Shown: positions 16,661 through 59,365 of the stretch, in pieces
Layout of the letters: each line of letters begins with the position of its first letter
Position numbering within the stretch: the first letter of the stretch is position 1
Notes under the pieces: model-generated
Databases searched by the model: none
Seen by the model: only the letters and a program-made list of their open reading frames with translations
What the model was told of the DNA's origin: nothing
Assembly (NCBI GenBank): GCA_977030845.1
Contig: OZ365118.1
Span: 22,940,001-23,004,000, forward strand
DNA length: 64,000 nt
From: Fimbriosthenelais zetlandica
Lineage: Eukaryota
Reading direction: 5' to 3'
Translations under genes and position numbers: made by a program

Positions 16661-16909
16661 TGTTTACATTTGTTTACATTTGTTTAAACATCTTAAACTA
16701 AACCCGCTGCGTATATAGAATACCACAGAATACCAAACCTGGTTCATAAGACATTTAGGAACATTTGTACACAATTTGAGTTAAATGCGGTGACGAGATA
16801 ACAACCGGGAGAGCGAAAACAAACCAAGCGGGCACAGAAGCTGGCCACAGCATCGACCAACGGCCGCCATTTTGTTTTACCTGCGACTCCACGTGGAAAG
16901 TAAACAAAC
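16661..16909. promoter_or_regulatory. Forkhead / YY1 / E-box cluster
   Basis: TGTTTAC x2 plus TGTTTAA at a 10-bp period (16661-16690), GCCGCCATTTTG (16863-16874), CACGTG (16890-16895) and GTAAACAAA (16900-16908). Confidence 0.3.
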
Positions 16910-17074: not shown

Positions 17075-17136
17075 CTGAAGCGGCCATTGCTCAGCAGGGA
17101 GCATTTAGTTTACACGCTTCCCGTGAGAGGCGCGCC
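17075..17136 (-). other. Candidate first exon, copy 2: GCA ATG GCC GCT TCA G|GTGAGA (MAAS, phase 1)
   Basis: ATG at 17087 and donor GTGAGA at 17074-17069; paralogous to copy 1, 184 bp away. Confidence 0.4.
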
Positions 17137-17258: not shown

Positions 17259-17342
17259 CTCGTGCAGCCATGGCTGAGCGGGGAACATTTTAGTGTTTAG
17301 CGGGGAGCATTTAGTTCACACGCTTTCCGTGAGGGGCGCGGC
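17259..17342 (-). other. Candidate first exon, copy 1: GCC ATG GCT GCA CGA G|GTAAGT (MAAR, phase 1)
   Basis: Good-context ATG at 17271 and consensus donor GTAAGT at 17258-17253. The 5' part is homologous to copy 2 and runs into the gap. Confidence 0.45.
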
Positions 17343-17470
17343 NNNNNNNNNNNNNNNNNNNNNNNNNNNNNNNNNNNNNNNNNNNNNNNNNNNNNNNNNN
17401 NNNNNNNNNNNNNNNNNNNNNNNNNNNNNNNNNNNNNNNNNNNNNNNNNNNNNNNNNNNNNNNNNNNNNN
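17343..17470. other. Assembly gap (128 N)
   Basis: Run of n bases. Confidence 1.
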
Positions 17471-17865: not shown

Positions 17866-18796
17866 GTAGAATAGGAAGCTAACATAATGGTGTGGAGCGG
17901 GCGGCAGTGAGAGTGAAGGTGATATTGTCCAGCACCGCGCCCCGCCACATTCATATCAACCGAGAATTGATATGAATGCTGAACCACTTCATGAATAATA
18001 GACGCCATGTCAGGACGAGCATTCTACAGGAAAGGCAATCTATTTGTCTGGGTAAAGGTGCGGTAAGGAGACGGGGGGGGGGGGGGGCTGGGCTGGAGAC
18101 GGGGGGGGGGGGGGGGGGTGGAGACGGGGGGCTGGAGCGGAAGACCCAGCTCTGAGACGCTCTGTCAGAACTCACCGCTTTGTAAAATATTCATTAATTT
18201 AGATTTATATCCACCAGAGGGTCATCTTGACCAGTGATGATTGATATAGGAGGGTCAAGATATAGAGGGGGCGGGGGGGGGGGGGGGGGTGAGGTACAGA
18301 GGGGACCTAATGCCCAGGCGGTATATAGTATTTATAGCAATACGACTATATCCCTGATGTCTCCTTATATAGTATAACATACACATCATATAGACATGAA
18401 GTAAACCTCAAAGCTGCCGTGTATAGGCCTGGGTATAGGCCCGTATATAGGCCTACAATGATGTGCAGTCTCACATCCATGTCAGGGACACACTAGGCCA
18501 GCCTCATACAAGGCGCTCTAAGCTCACAAACTGCACGTAAATTATCCACAAATAACGGCTGTCTGCCATTTTTAATTTCACTAGAACCTTTGTCTTCAAA
18601 AGAAGGCAGCGCTAAAAGACTATTTTAGACTTGAAGGACGTGGAGAAGCAAAGCATCTCAAGGCCGGCGTGTTGAGGAATCTCAGAGGTCAAAGAGAGGA
18701 CATTCCATGGCCGCCATCTTGTTATACACAGGATGGTCGCTAGGTGGCCACGTGATGAGCCTCGATCTCATAGCGAGGCTGACCCTGTCACTGAGC

Positions 18797-19155
18797 AGAC
18801 GGCCGGTAGAGGGAGAGGGCAGTGTTAAGTAGATGGCCGGTAGAGGGAGAGGGCAGTGTTAGTAGGCCTAGATGGCCGGTAGAGGGAGAGGGCAGTGTTA
18901 GTAGATGGCCGGTAGAGGGAGAGGGCAGTGTTAAGTAGATGGCCGGTAGAGGGAGAGGGCAGTGTTAGTAGGCCTAGATGGCCGGTAGAGGGAGAGGGCA
19001 GTGTTAGTAGATGGCCGGTAGAGGGAGAGGGCAGTGTTAGTAGATGGCCGGTAGAGGGAGAGGGCAGTGTTAGTAGATGGCCGGTAGAGGGCAGTGTTAG
19101 TAGATGGCCGGTAGAGGGCAGTGTTAGTAGATGGCCGGTAGAGGGCAGTGTCAGT
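18797..19155 (+). repeat. Minisatellite, 11 units (eight of 33-39 bp, three of 27 bp), carrying CTCF-like and YY1-core motifs
   Basis: Unit AGATGGCCGGTAGAGGG(AGAGGG)CAGTGTTAGT. Units 1-3 are duplicated as units 4-6 (106-bp block). The 27-bp units contain exact cores CCGGTAGAGGGCA at 19081, 19108 and 19135. Confidence 0.95.
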
Positions 19156-19234
19156 AGTGTAGCATCACGCCGTCTGATGGCGCCACCACCAGACCACAAT
19201 AGTGATGAATTAGGACAGCCCTCCACGACAAACA

Positions 19235-19247
19235 CGCCCCCTGGTGG
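19235..19247 (-). promoter_or_regulatory. CTCF core motif (exact, canonical)
   Basis: Minus strand CCACCAGGGGGCG, facing the plus-oriented array. Confidence 0.6.
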
Positions 19248-21199
19248 TGAGAAAAAGGTGCGAATGGCACAACAATAAGGAAGTTGGTTGGAAAAGGGCT
19301 GGCGATAAGGACAGGCGATTATGATGGAGGAGAAGGTGGGGAGAAGGTGGAGTAAGGAAGATGGATAGAGAGAGACCATCCCCCACCCCCCACCCCCACC
19401 ATGTCAGCTCCCCCCACATGATAATTACGGCAGGTATAAATATGACCCGCCTCATGATGACAGAGACAGAGCATGATTGCCACTCACACACTTTGTAAAA
19501 TGTATCGATAAAGGAAACCACTGTAACATTCTTTATTCCGACTCCTTCAACCACCGCCTTCATTAATACCTAATTAAATGACATCCATCTTTATATTGAT
19601 CATCTCCTATTGCTGGTTTTTAACTCCGTCAAAGTTTGAGTTGTGGCGGAGGGAATGTTGATGGAGGATTAAAAACAAAGAGATGTTGTGAGAGGTAAAC
19701 TAACATGGAACATGGGGCGGTCGATGTGTGACTGGGGGAGGTGAGGGGGAGGTGAGAGGGAGGGGGGGGGGGGGGGGAGAGGGAGGGGGAGAGGGAGAGG
19801 GAGAGAAGGTGAGGATGGAGGCAGGATGAAGACCCTCCACACCACTTGCTTCCATTGATCTTTCTCGGTCATGGAGGACTGTGAAAGCTGGGAGTGTCCA
19901 ATCAATAGAAGCACAATATCATGGCCCACACTTCCTCTCACAATATCATGGCCCACACTTCCTCCTTGGCCCACCTGTTCATGGTAAGATTCACCAGTGC
20001 TGAAGATGGCCACCAATCATTCAGCTTCACAACAGAAAGTGTGATGCGGAATAATGGAATTAAAGTCACCAATAAAACTGTCATAATATGGGGTGAGGGT
20101 GAGGGGGTAGTGGATGGGGGGCCAGGGGGCAGGGGCAGGGGGTGAGGGGTTGGGGTGAGAGTGTCTTGGATGAGTCACTGCTGAGACCAAAGTGGAAATG
20201 GGCGTGAATCTCCTGACTAGATTAGGAAATAATCATCATTGAATTATCATAAATTCGATTTGGAGTTGCACAAATTCACAGATTCTCAGATGAAGTGTTT
20301 TGCTAGGAGACTAAACTATTTACCAATGACTGTGATGACAGCTGAAGCCTCCTGATACCATCAAATTCCTGACAAACCCCAAACCCCCAGATTCCTGCCT
20401 TACACACCCAAATCACCAACCCAAATCACAAATCAAAGCTGTCATATGTAGGTTATAGCTGATGTAGCCTGACAGACTACATGCAGGCTGCTGTGATATT
20501 TTTTGAACCACATTTCCCTACAAGGCAATACTTTTTATTAGCCATGTAAGATGTGAGATGAAGAGAGAGTACCTTCCCCCCTGTCTCTCCCTCTCCTCCT
20601 CCCTCCACACCTAAATAAACCTCCCCCGAGCCTGCTAGCTGAGGAGAAACAAGTAGGTAAACACTTGACCACCTCTCACACGCCACTACCTCCACTTCCC
20701 TCTCTCTCATTTTTACATAAGGCAGACACTCTTATTTACAAACCTGCGGCCCCCAACACTCCACCAAAACCTCTCCTCACATTCTGCGCCACACCATCCA
20801 CCTACCGCCAAGCCCTACTGTAAACACTAGAACCAGCCATGGCATCCGCCTGGGAAATTAGGCATTGCCTTATTGGTTTTCCACTGAGATCATTAGAATA
20901 GTGAATCTTAGTGGTAAGCCATTCATTGACATGGCCATGCTTGGTGTGGGTGCTGGTAAGGCAGCGTGTATTGTGATTGAGGTCCGGGGATCACCTGTGA
21001 CGGACCCAGCTACTGTACACTGCCCTATAATAATAAAATGACCTTATACCGTCCTCCCGGGAGATGGTCAAACTGTGGTATGAGAAGGTGGACATGTCGG
21101 GGTCAGTCTTGACCACTAACTGTGGCATTTACCTTTACTATAGCAGCATTGATACCCCAACATCCAAATCACTGACCACACGACCACAGTCAGAAACTA

Positions 21200-22913: not shown

Positions 22914-24593
22914 GGTGAGGCTGACTGATATGTGAACATCGACCAGGGTGGTACCTTTACACCTGACAGGTGTTATACAGGTGTACTCAGGTGTTAAATA
23001 GGACTTAAATCCAGCTTTAACACGAGTACTGGACAGTGAGTGGACAATGAGGGGGAGACTGACCACCCACGGGTTATAGCCAGCCATGTGTGACCACTCA
23101 TACACTATAGGGGGCGCCACGGGGGGTCAGGGGTTAATATAATTACCACCCAGCCTATAGAACATGAACCTCCAAATAACTCCTCAATGACTCCTAAAAT
23201 AATTAACTCAATCTAATCAATGAGCAGTTTTTCTCCACCAGATGTTCTTTTCACACTTTCGGGAGGATTTTGTTACCGATCCGTGATATTGTACTCGAGC
23301 CATTACAATACATGGCTGTTATTGTCAGACCATTACAATACATGATTGTATCTTGTTGTTCATGTCAGGCCATTTACAATGATCCACGTGTATTAGATTA
23401 ATTACCTTAATGTGCCTTAATTAGCACTCAGTGTGATATTGAACATGAATCACATGAATCAATATGAACCTCACGGACTATATGAGTATTACTGCAATAT
23501 TCACACTCATTCACGATCCAATCTCAAGGAGAATTGGAAAAAGTTTCAGTAAAGTTGAAAGCACTTTAGAGTACAAGAGGATGAAATGAGAAAGTATTCC
23601 CCGGGAAACAAAGAAGCAATTAGCGGGCGAGGGGTGTTGAGGGGTGGTTGGGGAAGTGGGGGGTGGTTGGGGGGATTCCTGGACAATGGTGGGAGATGTA
23701 ATTAACGAGTACATTAATGGTGTGACACTCACAGCTATTAACTGGCCATCTCCCAAACTACCTACCCTCCCCCACCCTACCCTCTCACCACCCCACCCTA
23801 CCCTCTCACCACCCCACCTTACCCACCCCACAACATCCCAGACAAGGGGTGTTCCATTAAAAGTTCCTGCATCATTACCCAGTGCTGTGTGAGAACTTCT
23901 TGACCTTTTTTTAAAAAACACAATCTGAGACCCGGCCTTGTGTAACAGCCTGAGAGAACATGGCAGGCGGCCAGGACTGCCCGGGGGGGGGGGGGGGGGG
24001 ACTGTGACGGGGGGGGGGGGCAGTATGAGTTATACACCTGCCGGGGGTGGGGTCATCTAGCTAGAGACATGCATTGCATGATGCAATCATGCACCTACAT
24101 GCAACCTCAAATGCATCATTCACCTTCCATCTAAGGTGACTTTTGGTCGCTGTCATAATAAATGTAATAGAACCTTATTGTATTGGTATTGTTTCTCTCA
24201 TTTCTCTGGATTCTGAATTCATAAAATGATACCAGATTGAGAGATGATTCTGTGGCAGACAAAGCTGGCTGAGTGCCGTGTGGAGGTCAGGGCCTTCTCA
24301 CGACAACTATACAATAGTTACAACTCACTTAATGAGAGGGCATTATGAGGCGTTTAACTGAGGCGGGGTGGGTGTTTGTTGAGGCGGGGTCGGTGTCTTT
24401 TATCCATTCAGCCTCTGTTATGAGCGACTCTGGAGTCATGTAAGAGCTACTCGTCACCATGGAGGTTGTCATGACATCGTGGAGGTTGTCATGACATCGC
24501 CTCATTGTGTTTGTCGCTACATGATATCTATTGTCCGCGTGAGGCGCGTGGTCGCGTCATCTTCACGACGCATGCGCACCTCGCGCGTCATGC

Positions 24594-24606
24594 TGCCCCC
24601 TGGTGG
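24594..24606 (-). promoter_or_regulatory. CTCF core motif (exact)
   Basis: Minus strand CCACCAGGGGGCA(GC); next to an NRF1-like ACGCATGCGCA (24568-24578). Confidence 0.6.
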
Positions 24607-24615
24607 TAGCGACCC

Positions 24616-24704
24616 CCGCTAGAGGCGCCCTGGTCGCCGCTAGAGGCGCCCTGGTCGCCACTAGAGGCGCCCTGGTCGCCGCTAGAGGCGCCCTGGTCGC
24701 CGCT
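24616..24704 (+). repeat. GC-rich 21-bp minisatellite x4
   Basis: Unit CCRCTAGAGGCGCCCTGGTCG. Confidence 0.95.
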
Positions 24705-28552: not shown

Positions 28553-30001
28553 TATGGTACCTTTGCGTGTCTTCCACACACCCTTCATACCGTATCGATT
28601 GCCGATCTTCATTTCTTCATATTGCCTTTATATGACGACATGCCACAAAGACTAAAGTAAGAAGAAATGTTAGACTTTAATTAGCCTACTTGTTGCTGCA
28701 CCCCCGGCCGCCATCTTGGCGGGGTAAATTCGTGCAGTAATCACCAAGTGTTTAGGCATGAATGGAGAGTGGTTATTTGCATGTTTTGACCTGGGTGGCA
28801 TATGTAGAAACCTTGCCAGCGGCAACTATATATGTAACGATCATTGCCAAGTGATACTGGAAGGTGGAGGGGAAGGGTAGAGGGGAAGGTAGAGGGGAAG
28901 GGTAGGGGGGAAGGTATATATAGAGGGGAAGGTAGAGGAGGACAGATTCATGTGATAAGAAGCAAGCTCCACTCCCCTGTACCACTACGTCCTACTGGGG
29001 AATATTAGAGAGAAAGACAACAGAAGTAAAGCCTAATGCTATTGTCACAATCCGCCATTGTCATGGTAATGTGTGACGTCATCCGTGCTGTAACCAAGTA
29101 ACCATGACGTGTGTGGCGTTCAGGTTCTGACTTCACGTCGCCCACCAGGTGAACCATAGCACGCCTGGTCCACCAGGGGGAGCCCCCCAGTCCACCAGGG
29201 GCAGCACCAGTCCCGCCTTTAATTCTACACTTGTGTGTGTCTCATCATTAGCTTTAATTATATCCATCCTCAGGGACGGTCGACTTGGTCCAAGCTCGTC
29301 ATCGATTGTGACAAGTGTTTCAGTGTGGATGGTCGGTGAGAGTGGTATCATGAGATTAAACCAGTCTTGATCCACCAGGAGACACAATAAACTACCTGTG
29401 AAAAGGTACAGGCCTCGTCAAAGTGCATGATTCAACCACAAACACTGAGATAGAACATTGAGCTGAGGTGGATATAGGGGCAGATAGTGAGAAGTTACCT
29501 TACATGGGGGAGGGTGGGGGAGGGTGGTGGCGGATGGGGGAGGCAGGGAGATGCAGGGAGAGGCAGGGGGGGGGGGGGGGGGGCTGAGAGAGGCTGGTGA
29601 AGGCTGGTGAAGGCTGGCGTGGGACGATGAGGGGAAGGACCTGCATGACTAATCAACTAGAGGCGGAGATTGGACTGAGAGGATCTAAAAAAAAAGCAGC
29701 GCTACTTTTTGATGATGTGAGAGGAGTGGAAAAGTAGTGGAGGAGTGGTCCGGAAATCAGGCGGCGAGACGCCTCAACGGCGAGGCCAGATCTCCTACAC
29801 AGGGGGTGGGGGGTGGGGGGTGGGGGGTGGGGGGGGGGGTGAAGGTAGGGGAGGCAGAGAAGTGTGAGCCACGTACATTCACCTTCACCGTAAATAGATC
29901 AAAGTGCTTTTGTTTTGCTCGTCTTAGATGACTGCTTTAGATCGCCTCTAACCGCTGTCATTAATGCCGCTTGATTGCTTCAGCTAATTAGTCTGCCCCG
30001 A

Positions 30002-43389: not shown

Positions 43390-44399
43390 CATCTATAGGT
43401 CTCTACTAGACATGGGGAACGTGAAAATAGCTACATTTTATAAATTTCGTTTGAAAAGTAATGGTTTGATGTTTCTTAGACAGGAAATGAAACAGTGAAT
43501 GAAATAAGATGAATAATTAAGTCAATGATTGGCTATGTTGGATTGCCAGCAGGTTGGAGCACACATTTTGTAGCTATATTAGATCAGGTCTCTGAGGGGA
43601 CACGCTGGAATAGATAGTTACAGTGGGGGATTCACGAACCCCAGACCCCCTACATGCTACCAGTCCCCCTACTACATGCAACCAACCCTCCCGGGAATAA
43701 CACAAAAATAACCCACAAAATGAGCTCCCACCAGGAGCGCCACTTCCCATTCTCTTCCTTCTTCCCCTTCCCTTTCATTCTCCCACCTTTCATTCTTCTC
43801 TTTGTATCGCCTAATCCCACATATTTAAATATTAAAACCGGAATACAAATAGCAGAGTTGAATAACACCTTGTGTATCAGTTCTAATATCAAAAGTGCAA
43901 TATCCTAACCTATTGGGGAAAACACGTTGAAAATAATTGAATATTGTCATCAAAATGAGTTGGATGGTCATACAGGAGTAAGAAATGGAATATAAATAAA
44001 CATCTGTGCAAGATTCATTTCATATAAATAAACTGAAGGCAATCAGTTTGTTCAGATCAGGACTACCCATGTCAGAACTTCTAGAGAAGGCTATTTGAAA
44101 ACTAATGATGTTCAGTACTTAAGAATAACCTAGAATAAAATAATGTCTACACAGAAAACATAGTGGAATGACTCAACGACTGAAGGGCTGAAAATGAAGA
44201 TATACCTGGGGTGGTAAAGTCGGTTGCCACATTCAATCTAGAGAAATGTGAACCAATCTGGGCATACATTCTATTCACAGCATTCCTAAAGCAATTATAT
44301 CCAATCTACAAGCCAGTCAGGTTGTCTCCATAACCGTTCCTGGCCAACAAAAGTAGGAAAAAACGAAGATAAATGAAGATTTTAAGAGATGTTGCTTAC

Positions 44400-47108
44400 C
44401 TCTTCTTGTGCTCGTGGCGTTGACGGTTGTAAGGTACTTTTGCCGGCGTTTCCGTTCTCTCCTGCCCCCCCTGACACAGTTCGACTTTTCAAATTGTCCA
44501 TCTCCACGGCCGTGACGTAAGCGTTGGTGGCCTTGACCTTTGACCCCGGCGTTCCGTTGACGTCCTCCATGGGAGGTAGCATTCTCTGAAGCTCTTTTTT
44601 AGAGTTCTCATCGTTGTGTCTTTGTTCAGCGTCTCTACGTTTGATGATGATGATTGTAGCAATGATAATCATAGAGATGATCGCTGTGACGACCACAAAC
44701 ACTATAACAATAATCAGGTTGTCTTTAGACAGGTTCATGGACCGTGACTTGGCGTAACCCGCTACTTTAGTCACGTATATATGTAACTCACCAGGCGCGG
44801 ACAGTAAAGGTTCACCCTGATCCTGGACTATCACCTGGAGGAGGAAGCTATCTCCATCATTCTCCTCTAGTTCTTTATTCACAGATATAGCCCCCGTGCT
44901 GGGGTCAATAGCAAACGCATTGTTACTGTTACCGGTGGTGATCAGGTAGTTGAGGCGGGCGTTCTTACCGGAGTCCGCGTCGTGCGCTCTCAGTTTGGTG
45001 ATCACCTGACCCACCGTCAGTTTATTAGAGATTCTCAGTGAGTTGTTTTTTTGAGTGGGGAAGTCAAACACCGGAGCGTTGTCGTTTTTATCAGCGACGT
45101 AGACGGACACGCTGACGGTGCTGCTCTGACTGTGGTCGTCGTCACTAGACGCTACGACCACCATGTAGTAGACAGGCTTCTCCTCCCTGTCTAACACCTT
45201 CTGTGTAGAGATAGCTCCTGTCTGCGGATCTATCCTGAACATGTCCATGGGGCTGCGGGTGGGATCTAGTGAGTATGAGAAGTGGTTATACGGCTCTGAG
45301 TCTCTGTCCTCAGCCACCACCTGTCCTACCTCAGAGTTAGGCTGCTGGTTCTCAAACGTACCGAACGCATACGTCTCCTGCTGGAACCTGGGAACCTCAT
45401 CATCGATATCTACTATACCGATGAGTACTTTAGCCGTAGTGGAACGCGGGATGGAACCCTGGTCCTTAGCGATGACATGGAACTGTAGCTCAGTGAGATC
45501 TTCATGATCAAACACCACGTTAGCCGTTATACTGCCTGTGTCTTCATCTATCGCCACCAGGCCGCGCGCATCCTCGTCTACCTCGTATTTAATCCGTCCA
45601 TTAGTGTCAATGTCGCTGTCACTAGCCGTGACAGCCACTATAAACTCACCTATGAGGTTATTCTCTATAATAGTCGCGGTATACATGGGCTGGGAGAACT
45701 GGGGGGTATGGTCATTGTCATCCAGGATGGTTACCCGGATGTGGGCGAATGACGTCTGAGGAGGGTCGCCTTTATCACGACATTCTAACGTCAGGTCAAA
45801 GTAAGGCAACCTCTCCCTGTCAAATATAGACGACGTGACGATCTTATACTCAGTCAGGTAGAGTTTCTGTAGGTGGAAGTTGCTGTCACTCAGTGAGCAG
45901 GTGAACTTACCGTTCCTGTCACTGTCCTGGTCTATTATAGAGATATGAGCCACGAATGTGCCGGGCGGGGTGTTCTCTGCTACCTGAGCGTCACCACTTG
46001 TTGTCAGAGTGTTGACAGTGATTTGAGGAGCGTTATCGTTCACATCTTGTACCCTCACTACAACTGTAGACTGGGCAGGTAGAGAGTCAGGCCCGCTGTC
46101 ACGAGCTGTCACTGACAGTAGGTATATAGCTCCCTTCTCATAATCCAGCGGGCTCTGGACTATAATCTCCCCGGTCGTGGAGTCTATGAGGAATAAGTTA
46201 CCGTAGTTTTGTTGTGTGTGACGTGAGAGTTGGTACGTGATCTCACCGTTAGGGCCCGTATCCGGGTCTCTAGCCCTCACCTTGTATATGGTCGTACCTA
46301 CAGCTACGTTCTCCCTCACCGACACCTCATACGTTACGTTCTCAAACACCGGGTCGTTATCATTAGCGTCTAATACTGTAATATCAATAAGAACTGATCC
46401 AGACTTGGCCGGCTCGCCTCCATCCACCGCCAGGATCTTTAACTGGTAGAAGTTTTTCTTTTCTCTGTCTAACTCATCGATGAGCACTAGACGCAGGTCC
46501 GTGGCACCGTCGGCAGTTTCTCTCACTTTTAATTCAAACTTTTTGGAGCCTGACTCTAGGAGGTAGTCCTTGACACTGTTCATGGCGCTGTCTGGATCCA
46601 GCGCGGCCGGGATGCTGAAGCTGGTCCCGGGTAAAGTCGACTCAGAGATCTTATGATTTATACGGCTCTGAGGGAAGTACGGGGCGTTATCATTCACGTC
46701 AAGTATCTCTACAGTTACCTTAATGATCTGAAAGTTCTTCACCGGCCTCACCGCCACATCAAACTTGACTAAACACTCATCTGTCTGTGTACACAGCTTG
46801 TCCCTGTCCAGCCTGTCTGTGGTGGTAATAATCCCTGTGGCTGTCTCTATATCAAAGTACTGTCTGTCTAACTCTGGCTGGGTGAGGAAGCTGAACCGTA
46901 ACTTAGACAGCTCTGATCCGTTATACTTCAGGTTGAGTTTAGCATCTGTGATGATGTTACCTACAAAAGTCCCAGCGATGAGTTCCTCCCTGATCTGACA
47001 CAGGACTGGCTCAATCTGTCTCCGTCTGCGAGCTGCTCGACCAGCCGTGTCTACCAGCAAGAGGAGCAGGAGGTAGCCTAACAAGGCTATACTCTGTGAC
47101 ACTCCCAT
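44400..47108 (-). CDS. Pcdh: Protocadherin (7-EC, delta1-like) large coding exon: signal peptide + EC1-EC7 + TM + proximal cytoplasmic tail (903 codons); gene continues in unidentified downstream exon(s)
   Basis: Lies within the 924-aa ORF 44382-47156, which starts at TTG; the first in-frame ATG is at 47108 (MGVSQSIALLGYLLLLLLVDTAG, hydrophobic leader). Linkers DVNDNAP, DANDNDP, DVNDNAP, DDNDHTP, DIDDEVP and DKNDNAP plus DRE/DYE and DxD motifs define 7 EC repeats. EC1 has the protocadherin-type DRDKLC-x5-C. TM LIIVIVFVVVTAIISMIIIATIIII is at 44643-44717. The donor GAG|GTAAGC is at 44400/44399 (phase 0). The exact ortholog cannot be assigned. Confidence 0.96.
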
Positions 47109-47131
47109 ATTACACTCCCTATACGTCCCAT
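47087..47131 (-). other. uORF2 (14 aa), out of frame and overlapping the main ATG
   Basis: ATG at 47131, 23 nt upstream of the main ATG; MGRIGSVIWECHRV* ends at 47087, inside the CDS. Confidence 0.4.
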
Positions 47132-47136
47132 GTGGG

Positions 47137-47208
47137 TCACCACGCCACCCCGACAACTATACTCCCTGATAGGGCACTAGAGAGCGTCCAAGTCCTCCTC
47201 CAGGGCAT
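47137..47208 (-). other. uORF1 (23 aa) upstream of the protocadherin ATG
   Basis: ATG at 47208 to TGA at 47139-47137 (MPWRRTWTLSSALSGSIVVGVAW*). Relevant only if included in the mRNA. Confidence 0.35.
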
Positions 47209-58516: not shown

Positions 58517-59365
58517 AGCCCCGCTCAGCCCCGACCAGCCCCGCTCAGCCCCGCTCAGCCCCGACCAGCCCCGACCAGCCCCGCTCAGCCCCGCTCAGCC
58601 CCGCTCAGCCCCGCTCAGCCCCGACCAGCCCCGACCAGCCCCGCTCAGCCCCGGCCAGCCCCGACCAGCCCCGCTCAGCCCCGCTCAGCCCCGACCAGCC
58701 CCGACCAGCCCCGCTCAGCCCCGACCAGCCCCGACCAGCCCCGCTCAGCCCCGGCCAGCCCCGACCAGCCCCGCTCAGCCCCGCTCAGCCCCGACCAGCC
58801 CCGACCAGCCCCGACCAGCCCCGCTCAGCCCCGACCAGCCCCGACCAGCCCCGACCAGCCCCGACCAGCCCCGCTCAGCCCCGACCAGCCCCGACCAGCC
58901 CCGCTCAGCCCCGGCCAGCCCCGCTCAGCCCCGCTCAGCCCCGACCAGCCCCGACCAGCCCCGACCAGCCCCGCTCAGCCCCGACCAGCCCCGACCAGCC
59001 CCGCTCAGCCCCGGCCAGTCCCGACCAGCCCCGCTCAGCCCCGGCCAGCCCCGACCAGCCCCGCTCAGCCCCGCTCAGCCCCGACCAGCCCCGACCAGCC
59101 CCGACCAGCCCCGACCAGCCCCGACCAGCCCCGACCAGCCCCGACCAGCCCCGCTCAGCCCCGCTCAGCCCCGGCCAGCCCCGACCAGCCCCGGCCAGCC
59201 CCGACCAGCCCCGCTCAGCCCCGGCCAGCCCCGACCAGCCCCGACCAGCCCCGACCAGCCCCGACCAGCCCCGACCAGCCCCGACCAGCCCCGGCCAGCC
59301 CCGACCAGCCCCGCTCAGCCCCGCTCAGCCCCGACCAGCCCCGCTCAGTCCCGCTCAGCCCCGGC
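58517..59365 (+). repeat. 10-bp GC-rich satellite, ~85 units of three interspersed variants
   Basis: CCGAC/CCGCT/CCGGC + CAGCC; explains the 339-aa and 298-aa Pro-rich ORFs. Confidence 0.98.

What the first reader, a model, noticed from the sequence alone, without database searches (positions are those of the whole stretch)
18797..19247. Minisatellite that is a tandem array of CTCF motifs, capped by an opposing canonical site
The three 27-bp units contain TGGCCGGTAGAGGGCAGTG, which fits the 19-bp CTCF consensus pattern. The eight longer units carry the GGGAG variant (CCGGTAGAGGGAG) created by a 6-bp internal duplication. Every unit also has a YY1/Pho-type AGATGGC(C)G (AGACGGC in unit 1). All 11 point the same way, and 80 bp later sits an exact reverse site CCACCAGGGGGCG. 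A YY1 12-mer (18710) and another CTCF-like site (18737) lie just before it. It resembles a miniature CTCF tandem array (cf. mammalian DXZ4/Firre), where copy number could tune insulation; function is inferred.
Basis: partly seen in the sequence, partly recalled or inferred. Interest (0 to 1): 0.7.

Follow-up and report, generated by a model that had tools for sequence, protein, structure and literature searches.

The report
Young minisatellite carrying CTCF-like words
A short DNA motif is copied 11 times in a row next to a promoter-like spot in a marine worm genome, but only three copies carry a believable docking word for the genome-folding protein CTCF, so it is most likely an ordinary young repeat and not a shown insulator.

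Summary
The sequence observation is correct. There are 11 head-to-tail units at 18797-19155 (+): eight long (33/34/39 bp) and three short (27 bp). A 13-base reverse CTCF-type word lies 80 bp further on, and a canonical YY1-type 12-mer lies 77 bp before the array.

- The animal (a spiralian, probably an annelid) has a CTCF gene with conserved DNA-reading fingers.
- CTCF-type words are 10-25 times over-represented in its genome.
- The three short units carry such a word.
- In the eight long units a 6-bp AGAGGG duplication breaks the word. That word class is only 1.9x over control.
- The YY1-like word inside the units is only 2.2x over control.

The array is unique to this locus, very young, and not part of a mobile element. 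It lies 0.88 Mb from a chromosome-scale contig end, in a stretch with about one minisatellite per kb. The nearby protocadherin gene is solitary, so the vertebrate Pcdh-cluster analogy fails.

Tandem CTCF-type words occur at an estimated few dozen other places in this genome. The scan already met one on other DNA (s1-203942).

Most likely this is a promoter-upstream VNTR that multiplied a CTCF-type word. CTCF binding and any insulating role are untested.

The parts
18797..19155 (+). Whole minisatellite: 11 head-to-tail units, G-rich on the + strand
   Evidence: Unique in the 447-Mb genome at up to 2 mismatches.
18797..19008 (+). Two 106-bp higher-order copies (units of 34+39+33 bp, twice) that differ at one base (18800 C/T)
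   Evidence: family D2, 98%; 1 difference in 106.
18797..19074 (+). Eight long units (33/34/39 bp) in which an AGAGGG duplication splits the CTCF-type word. Best register: TGGCCGGTAGAGGGAGAGG.
   Evidence: Matrix score 12.6-13.1 bits. The word class CCRSYAGRKGGARR occurs 1329 times against 717 in control.
19075..19155 (+). Three short 27-bp units, each with TGGCCGGTAGAGGGCAGTG (19078-19096, 19105-19123, 19132-19150). The last unit has a private T to C change.
   Evidence: (19.76 bits each). The word class CCGSYAGRKGGCRS occurs 698 times against 66 in control.
19232..19250 (-). Reverse CTCF-type site TCACCACCAGGGGGCGTGT (13-mer at 19235-19247), 80 bp after the array
   Evidence: (15.8 bits). 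Similarity to the unit beyond the core is marginal (22 of 500 shuffles).
18709..18720 (-). Canonical YY1-type 12-mer AAGATGGCGGCC, a promoter-type word in this genome
   Evidence: Genome-wide 2483 against 24 in control.
18749..18754 (.). CACGTG E-box, about 30 nt upstream of the YY1-type word when read on the minus strand. The same order recurs at 16862 and 28706.
18734..18752 (+). Weak CTCF-like word TGGTCGCTAGGTGGCCACG between the E-box and the YY1-type word
   Evidence: 9.3 bits. Its likeness to the unit is not above chance (177 of 500 shuffles).

Best explanation
This is a young, locus-specific minisatellite (VNTR) that grew by replication slippage and unequal exchange in a subterminal, minisatellite-prone part of the chromosome. 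It lies 77-446 nt upstream of a promoter-like module on the minus strand (E-box followed by a YY1-type word).

Its unit contains a CTCF-type word, perhaps copied from a promoter-proximal site such as annelids commonly have. That origin is inferred. The flanks show no seed copy.

Slippage on AGAGGG produced a 6-bp longer unit that breaks the word, and that unit type now makes up 8 of the 11 copies. The remaining three short units and the reverse site 80 bp away can plausibly bind the worm's CTCF. The array as such has no demonstrated or required role. It is one of an estimated few dozen places where this genome's frequent tandem duplication has multiplied a CTCF-type word.

Shown: the anatomy, the uniqueness, the youth, the genomic setting, the presence of a CTCF gene and the word statistics.
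Inferred: the promoter, the origin of the unit's word, the direction of the 6-bp change and the binding.
For: Anatomy and youth:
- The higher-order copies differ at 1 base in 106, and units 6-8 are identical.

Not a mobile element:
- The unit and its flanks are unique in the genome.
- No terminal inverted repeats were found.

Setting:
- The window has 63 arrays in 64 kb (10.6% of bases). An evenly spaced 200-kb sample of C1 has 33 arrays (2.2%).
- The array lies 0.88 Mb from the end of the 23.84-Mb contig C37.

The CTCF word is in use in this genome:
- A CTCF orthologue is present, with zinc-finger exons in order. The finger 5-6 exon is 81% identical to solved CTCF residues 372-418.
- CCASYAGRKGGCRS occurs 1622 times against 64 in control. 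The CCG variant occurs 698 times against 66.

Only the short units fit:
- Short units score 19.8 bits and long units 13.1 bits.
- The long-unit word class is only 1.9x over control.

Recurrence:
- There are 574 same-strand pairs of CTCF-type 12-mers 8-38 nt apart, against 13 in control.
- The listed pairs form other arrays, most of them near contig ends.

Promoter-like module:
- Three YY1-type 12-mers lie in the window, all on the minus strand. Each has CAC(G/T)TG about 20-45 nt upstream.
- This word class is about 100x over control genome-wide.
- In the annelid Dimorphilus, CTCF motifs are mostly single and promoter-proximal (PMC7854359).
Against: - Among 96 minisatellites examined, only this one carries a CTCF-type word. 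It is not a typical array.
- CTCF-type 12-mers stand in close tandem pairs about six times more often than control words do (574 of 7422 against 13 of 1034). This could mean that such arrays are favoured and are more than a by-product.
- The array lies inside a local cluster of strong CTCF-type words. There are five non-array hits of 13 bits or more in 15.6-24.6 kb, where about 0.5 is expected from the C1 sample.
- No seed copy could be shown in the flanks.
- No RNA, chromatin or population data could be obtained. The promoter, the neutrality and the polymorphism are all unverified.
Confidence: 0.62

Rival explanations
1. The array is a functional multi-site CTCF element. The three short units, the reverse site at 19235 and the neighbouring CTCF-type sites (15633+, 17850+, 22400+, 24591-) form a promoter-proximal tether or boundary. 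Its strength depends on the number of intact units, so copy number tunes insulation or promoter activity.
For: - The short units score among the best CTCF matches in the window.
- Their word class is 10x over control.
- CTCF is encoded, with conserved recognition helices.
- Strong sites cluster locally (compared).
- Tandem CTCF words are more frequent than tandem control words.
- CTCF-like motifs are enriched at domain borders in the squid Euprymna (PMC10658181).
Against: - Eight of the 11 units have the core broken by the 6-bp duplication, and these are the units that expanded most recently. That runs against selection for binding.
- The array is too young to show constraint.
- In the annelid studied, CTCF motifs act mostly singly at promoters with no directional arrangement.
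- Orientation-dependent looping appears to be derived in vertebrates.
- No occupancy, accessibility or contact data are available.
Confidence: 0.2
2. The resemblance is pure coincidence. This is a G-rich minisatellite of the classical kind, and its unit is itself an internal repeat of GTAGAKGGC. It happens to resemble the G-rich CTCF core and is not bound by CTCF at all, for example because the CCGG in each unit is methylated.
For: - The unit contains two 10-nt sub-repeats, GTAGATGGCC and GTAGAGGGCA, that agree at 8 of 10 positions (read). The 'YY1-like' word is therefore simply the second half-copy.
- The + strand is G-rich over most of the window.
- The A to G change at core position 3 creates a CpG at the core position that, from my own recollection of the CTCF-DNA structure papers, is methylation-sensitive.
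- CpG observed/expected is about 0.5-0.6 over the array, which indicates partial depletion.
Against: - A 19.8-bit match was seen in none of the other 95 arrays, nor anywhere in 200 kb of sampled sequence.
- The CCG variant class is itself 10x over-represented, so this species appears to use it.
- The array lies among other canonical sites.
Confidence: 0.15
3. The repeat is part of a coding exon that encodes a repetitive peptide. Open frames run through it on both strands.
For: - Frames of 116 aa (+) and 184 aa (-) are open across the array.
- Most unit lengths (27, 33, 39 bp) are multiples of three.
Against: - The two 34-bp units shift the frame.
- A word search with the 184-aa frame found no relative.
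- No cadherin homologue matches outside the large exon.
- Open frames are expected in a stop-poor G-rich repeat.
Confidence: 0.02

Closest known systems
Classical G-rich hypervariable minisatellites / VNTRs (Jeffreys-type; own knowledge)
   Same: - Units of 27-39 bp lie head to tail and are G-rich on one strand.
- The location is near a chromosome end, in a stretch crowded with other minisatellites.
- The array shows higher-order units and near-identical copies.
- Variant units are grouped at one end of the array.
   Different: - Length polymorphism and recombination activity could not be tested.
- The unit carries a transcription-factor word that the species over-represents.
Other tandem CTCF-type words in this same genome (for example a 21-bp CCACCAGGTGGCAGGTCTGGG array at several C1 sites, a 31-bp array at C3:381985, and earlier finding s1-203942)
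   Same: - They are tandem arrays of 20-60-bp units, each with a CTCF-type word.
- Most lie near contig ends.
   Different: - Those arrays carry the canonical CCA word in every unit, and some recur at several loci.
- This one is single-locus, uses the CCG variant, and has the word intact in only 3 of 11 units.
DXZ4 and Firre CTCF-binding tandem repeats of mammals (PMC3491370, abstract)
   Same: Same-orientation CTCF sites are multiplied by tandem repetition.
   Different: - DXZ4 is a large macrosatellite (kilobase-scale units, own knowledge) whose CTCF binding on the inactive X chromosome has been demonstrated.
- Here the array spans 359 bp, nothing is known about binding, and no sex-chromosome context is known.
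Promoter-upstream VNTRs such as the INS VNTR or MAOA-uVNTR (own knowledge)
   Same: A G-rich minisatellite lies a few hundred bases upstream of a promoter-type module.
   Different: - The promoter here is inferred from motifs alone.
- No expression or genotype data exist.
Clustered protocadherin promoter and enhancer CTCF sites of vertebrates (CSE / HS5-1; own knowledge)
   Same: A protocadherin gene lies 25 kb away on the minus strand, and the + strand words point towards it.
   Different: - There is no tandem cluster of variable exons. The paralogues are scattered over 22 Mb of C37.
- No shared constant exons were found.

Membership tests
Minisatellite / VNTR | Head-to-tail units of roughly 10-100 bp | tested here: met
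   11 units of 27-39 bp.
Minisatellite / VNTR | Signs of unequal exchange or slippage (higher-order units, blocks of variant units) | tested here: met
   Two 106-bp higher-order copies differ at 1 base. The 6-bp indel variant stands in contiguous blocks.
Minisatellite / VNTR | Copy number varies among individuals | not testable with these tools
   No sequencing run was listed. No other assembly DNA could be fetched.
CTCF binding site | Match to the conserved core CCASYAGRKGGCRS or to the 19-bp matrix | tested here: inconclusive
   The short units match at 13 of 14 core positions (G for A at position 3) and score 19.8 bits. The long units lose the C at position 12 and score 13.1 bits.
CTCF binding site | The organism encodes CTCF with conserved core-reading fingers | tested here: met
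   The locus at C19:38.51 Mb has finger exons in order. Its best single-domain match is to solved CTCF (76 bits, 81% identity over residues 372-418).
CTCF binding site | The word class is over-represented in this genome against a reversed control | tested here: inconclusive
   Short-unit class: 698 against 66 (met). Long-unit class: 1329 against 717 (not met).
CTCF binding site | Occupancy in vitro or in vivo | not testable with these tools
   No ChIP, ATAC or binding data could be reached.
DXZ4/Firre-type CTCF macrosatellite | Kilobase-scale unit repeated tens of times | tested here: not met
   Units are 27-39 bp and the array spans 359 bp.
DXZ4/Firre-type CTCF macrosatellite | Every unit binds CTCF, and the array anchors long-range contacts | not testable with these tools
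   No chromatin data are available. Eight of 11 units have a broken core.
Vertebrate-type clustered protocadherin locus | Tandem variable exons, each with its own promoter, spliced to shared constant exons | tested here: not met
   About 21 full-length paralogues are scattered from 1.2 to 22.98 Mb on C37. The nearest one scored is more than 1 Mb away. No further cadherin exon is found in the window.
YY1/Pho site | Canonical AAGATGGCGGC word | tested here: inconclusive
   The flank word at 18709-18720 is canonical, and its class occurs 2483 times against 24 in control. The in-unit word AGATGGCCGG belongs to a class only 2.2x over control.
Promoter-upstream VNTR | Location within about 1 kb upstream of a transcription start | tested here: inconclusive
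   The promoter is inferred only from an E-box and a YY1-type word in minus-strand order, seen three times in the window. There are no RNA data.

The most novel reading that the evidence does not exclude
This spiralian genome holds an estimated few dozen copy-number-variable tandem arrays of CTCF-type words, concentrated towards chromosome ends. This array would be one of them. In the novel reading they are real CTCF landing pads whose unit number sets the strength of a boundary or promoter tether. That would be a natural 'VNTR insulator' class outside vertebrates.
Probability: 0.07. Interest if true: 0.7.

Novelty: new member of a known kind. Interest (0 to 1): 0.25.

Why it matters
As it stands this is an ordinary young VNTR, and its main value is cautionary. 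In this genome, tandem duplication readily multiplies short functional words: CTCF-type and YY1-type words in my own searches, and splice donors according to earlier notes of the scan that I did not check. A row of motifs is therefore not evidence of a designed array.

If CTCF did occupy such arrays, they would offer a natural allelic series for testing how the number of CTCF sites affects insulation in a spiralian. For that group, direct evidence on CTCF function is almost absent (PMC10658181, PMC10658182).

Tried and rejected
- **Mobile-element origin.** A genome-wide DNA search with the array and flanks and pattern searches at up to 2 mismatches found only this locus. The one exception is a single look-alike site at C10:56847437. 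BLAST of the flanks against 27 other loci gave only low-complexity hits. Inverted-repeat hits were poly-G/C, apart from one 21-nt partial unit copy. Rejected.
- **Degenerate seed units in the flanks.** Upstream similarity is not above shuffles (177 of 500). The reverse site is marginal (22 of 500). The direction of the 6-bp change and the origin of the unit remain undecided.
- **Relationship to the 31-bp C3 and C10 arrays.** They share TAGAGGGCAGT and TAGGCCT, but there is no flank similarity. I treat this as a shared motif, not shared descent.
- **RNA or DNA reads.** No run was listed.
- **Orthologous region.** The 82-kb contig of a relative with 79% protein identity could not be served.
- **Search with the array-spanning open frame.** Blank.
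- **Metagenome pattern scan.** Blank.
- **Wider unbiased genome sample.** The baselines therefore rest on C1 only.
- **Pfam on ten nearby open frames.** Nothing.
- **Rfam and tRNA scans of the window.** Nothing.
- **Bacterial promoter and terminator scan.** Irrelevant for an animal genome.
- **Helical phasing as in Helitron minisatellite insulators** (bioRxiv 10.64898/2026.08.08.743475, abstract only). Units of 27 and 33 bp are not multiples of about 10.5 bp. I did not pursue this.

Full report
**Observation.**
The stretch 18797-19155 is a clean minisatellite on the + strand. It has 11 units of 34, 39, 33, 34, 39, 33, 33, 33, 27, 27 and 27 bp. All begin with AGATGGCCGG, except unit 1, which begins with AGACGGCCGG.
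- Units 1-8 read GGTAGAGGG-AGAGGG-CAG, so the extra six bases are a perfect tandem duplication of AGAGGG.
- Units 9-11 lack the duplication and read TGGCCGGTAGAGGGCAGTG.
- The other variants are one extra A (units 1 and 4), an AGGCCT insert (units 2 and 5) and a T to C change in unit 11.
- Units 1-3 and 4-6 are two 106-bp higher-order copies that differ at a single base (18800).
- Units 6-8 are identical. The array is therefore very young.
- The reverse word CCACCAGGGGGCG lies at 19235-19247, 80 bp after the array.
- AAGATGGCGGCC lies at 18709-18720 on the minus strand.
- A weak CTCF-like word lies at 18734-18752.

**What animal, and does it have CTCF?**
- The one large open frame in the window (44382-47156, minus strand, 924 aa) has six cadherin domains.
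- Its nearest named relatives are annelid protocadherins, from Ridgeia (46% identity) and Platynereis (45%). Earlier notes of the scan call the genome spiralian.
It was used only as a probe.
- One hit, at C19:38.51 Mb, stood out at 74% identity within a short exon.
- That locus holds exons for fingers 1-10 in order.
- By reference, its finger 2-4 exon aligns colinearly to solved CTCF residues 310-371.
- Its finger 5-6 exon gives a single-domain score of 76 bits and 81% identity to residues 372-418. Generic KRAB-type fingers reach at most 40 bits.

The animal therefore has CTCF, with the core-reading helices conserved.

**Is the word used in this genome?**
Each count below is compared with the same pattern read backwards as a control.

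| Word class | Count | Control | Ratio |
|---|---|---|---|
| CCASYAGRKGGCRS (canonical CTCF core) | 1622 | 64 | about 25x |
| CCGSYAGRKGGCRS (variant in the short units) | 698 | 66 | about 10.6x |
| CCRSYAGRKGGARR (A at position 12, as in the long units) | 1329 | 717 | 1.9x |
| AARATGGCGGCC (canonical YY1-type) | 2483 | 24 | about 100x |
| ARATGGCCGG (the word inside the units) | 1261 | 581 | 2.2x |

- The long units score 13.1 bits, and the reverse site scores 15.8 bits.
- The best sites in the window score 20-23 bits.
- The array therefore offers three credible CTCF-type sites, not eleven.
- The in-unit 'YY1' word is better explained by the unit's own structure. The 27-bp unit holds two 10-nt sub-repeats, GTAGATGGCC and GTAGAGGGCA, that agree at 8 of 10 positions.

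**Is it a mobile element or a dispersed family?**
No.
- The array with its flanks, and both unit types at up to two mismatches, occur only here in the 447-Mb genome.
- The one exception is a single look-alike site on C10.
- The flanks match nothing else that I fetched.
- No terminal inverted repeats frame the array.

**Setting.**
- The array lies 0.88 Mb from the end of the 23.84-Mb contig C37.
- The window holds 63 arrays with period of at least 10 bp and at least 3 copies. That is about one per kb and 10.6% of its bases.
- Twenty evenly spaced 10-kb samples of C1 hold 33 arrays, or 2.2% of their bases.
- Genome-wide, 574 same-strand pairs of CTCF-type 12-mers stand 8-38 nt apart, against 13 for the control.
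- The pairs listed form other arrays. Examples are a 21-bp unit at several C1 sites, a 31-bp unit at C3:381985 and another at C10:1476773. Most lie within a few Mb of contig ends.
- From the first 100 listed pairs I estimate a few dozen such arrays in the genome.
- The scan had already met one on other DNA (s1-203942).

**By-product or favoured?**
- CTCF-type 12-mers number 7422 against 1034 in control.
- That puts 7.7% of them in close tandem pairs, against 1.3% of control words.
- A few large arrays and repeated families inflate the first figure.
- Counted as independent arrays, the two rates look similar, but I could not count the control arrays exactly.
- Among 96 arrays examined directly, only this one has a CTCF hit of 8 bits or more. 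It is therefore an unusual array, though not a unique one.
- It also lies within a local cluster of strong CTCF-type words (15633+, 17850+, 19232-, 22400+, 24591-).
- That is five hits of 13 bits or more in 9 kb, where the C1 sample predicts about 0.5. The interval was chosen after the fact.

**Local function.**
- The window has three YY1-type 12-mers (16862, 18709, 28706), where 0.01 is expected.
- All three are on the minus strand, and each has CAC(G/T)TG about 20-45 nt upstream on that strand.
- Two start-codon-plus-donor cassettes on the same strand lie at about 17.27 and 17.09 kb. They were first noted in s1-214116.
- I therefore read 18.70-18.76 kb as a promoter-type module that faces left.
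- On that reading the array lies 77-446 nt upstream of the YY1-type word. This is inference from motifs only.
- It agrees with the annelid Dimorphilus, where CTCF motifs are the commonest motif in open chromatin. There they lie mostly at promoters, singly, and without directional arrangement (PMC7854359).
- The protocadherin open frame ends with a strong donor, GAG|GTAAGC, just before its stop codon.
- That gene may therefore continue leftwards, and the array could even be intronic.
- No further cadherin exon was found by homology.

**The Pcdh and DXZ4 analogies.**
- The roughly 21 full-length protocadherin paralogues are all on C37 but scattered from 1.2 to 22.98 Mb.
- This one is the most distal, and the nearest paralogue scored is more than 1 Mb away.
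- The vertebrate cluster logic therefore does not apply.
- DXZ4 is a macrosatellite with demonstrated CTCF binding (PMC3491370). Here the whole array spans 359 bp.
- The orientation rule behind 'capped by an opposing site' has been shown for vertebrates only. It was not found in echinoderms (PMC13317027).
- For spiralians, only squid domain borders with CTCF-like motifs are known, and motif directionality could not be identified there (PMC10658181, PMC10658182).

**Verdict.**
This is a real, young, single-locus VNTR in a minisatellite-rich subterminal region, beside a promoter-like module.
- Its unit multiplied a CTCF-type word. The word is intact in three units and broken in the eight that expanded most recently.
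- CTCF binding to the short units is plausible. A copy-number-tuned insulator is not supported and not excluded.
- No reads, chromatin data or orthologous DNA could be obtained.
- The N run at 17343-17470 was left as it is.
- No contig looked human.

Noticed in passing
G000:C1:1217876-1354706 and C1:1424531-1747495: Large-period tandem blocks, each carrying CTCF-type words. One has nine CCGCTAGGTGGC(+) sites spaced about 17.3 kb apart. The other has repeated (+,+,-) triplets of CCGCCAGGGGGC spaced about 29 kb apart. They look like macrosatellites in the distal 2 Mb of C1.
   Followed up: no
G000:C1:7452008, 68729708, 70547470, 71205843, 71421842; C3:381985-382862; C10:1476773-1477065; C1:70592577: Other minisatellites have a canonical CTCF-type word in every unit (21-bp and 31-bp units). 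Most lie near contig ends. One unit joins the word to CACGTG.
   Followed up: partly
window 16862-16873, 18709-18720, 28706-28717 (all minus strand): Three YY1-type 12-mers AARATGGCGGCC lie in the window, each with CAC(G/T)TG about 20-45 nt upstream on the same strand. Genome-wide this word class is about 100x over control. It also forms a 37-bp array at C1:529721-530548.
   Followed up: partly
window 17075-17087 and 17259-17271 (minus strand), beside the N run 17343-17470: Two start-codon-plus-splice-donor cassettes, ATGGCCGCTTCAG|GTGAGA and ATGGCTGCACGAG|GTAAGT, lie in a duplicated segment of about 210 bp. They may be alternative first coding exons of an unidentified minus-strand gene.
   Followed up: partly
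window 44394-44402 (minus strand): The 924-aa protocadherin open frame has a strong donor, GAG|GTAAGC, five codons before its stop. The gene probably splices on to downstream exons that homology did not find.
   Followed up: partly
G000:C37, 1.2-22.98 Mb: All of the roughly 21 full-length protocadherin paralogues that were scored lie on this one contig. They are scattered, not tightly clustered.
   Followed up: no
window 24616-24704, next to 24591-24609: A 21-bp x 4.2 array, CCGCTAGAGGCGCCCTGGTCG, is a CTCF-type word with one G missing. It abuts the strongest reverse CTCF-type site of the window (22.9 bits) in a CpG-rich patch.
   Followed up: no
window 21004-21026 (minus strand): A lone inverted partial copy of the unit, TATAGGGCAGTGTACAGTAGCTGG, agrees with it at 19 of 23 positions. 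It lies 1.85 kb after the array and lacks the CCGG part.
   Followed up: partly
window 58517-59363: A 10-bp x 85 array, AGCCCCGACC, explains the 339-aa open frame and the GC peak there. It is not a gene.
   Followed up: partly
G000:C19:38509400-38511400 (L017): This is the CTCF orthologue of the genome, with finger exons 1-10 in order.
   Followed up: partly
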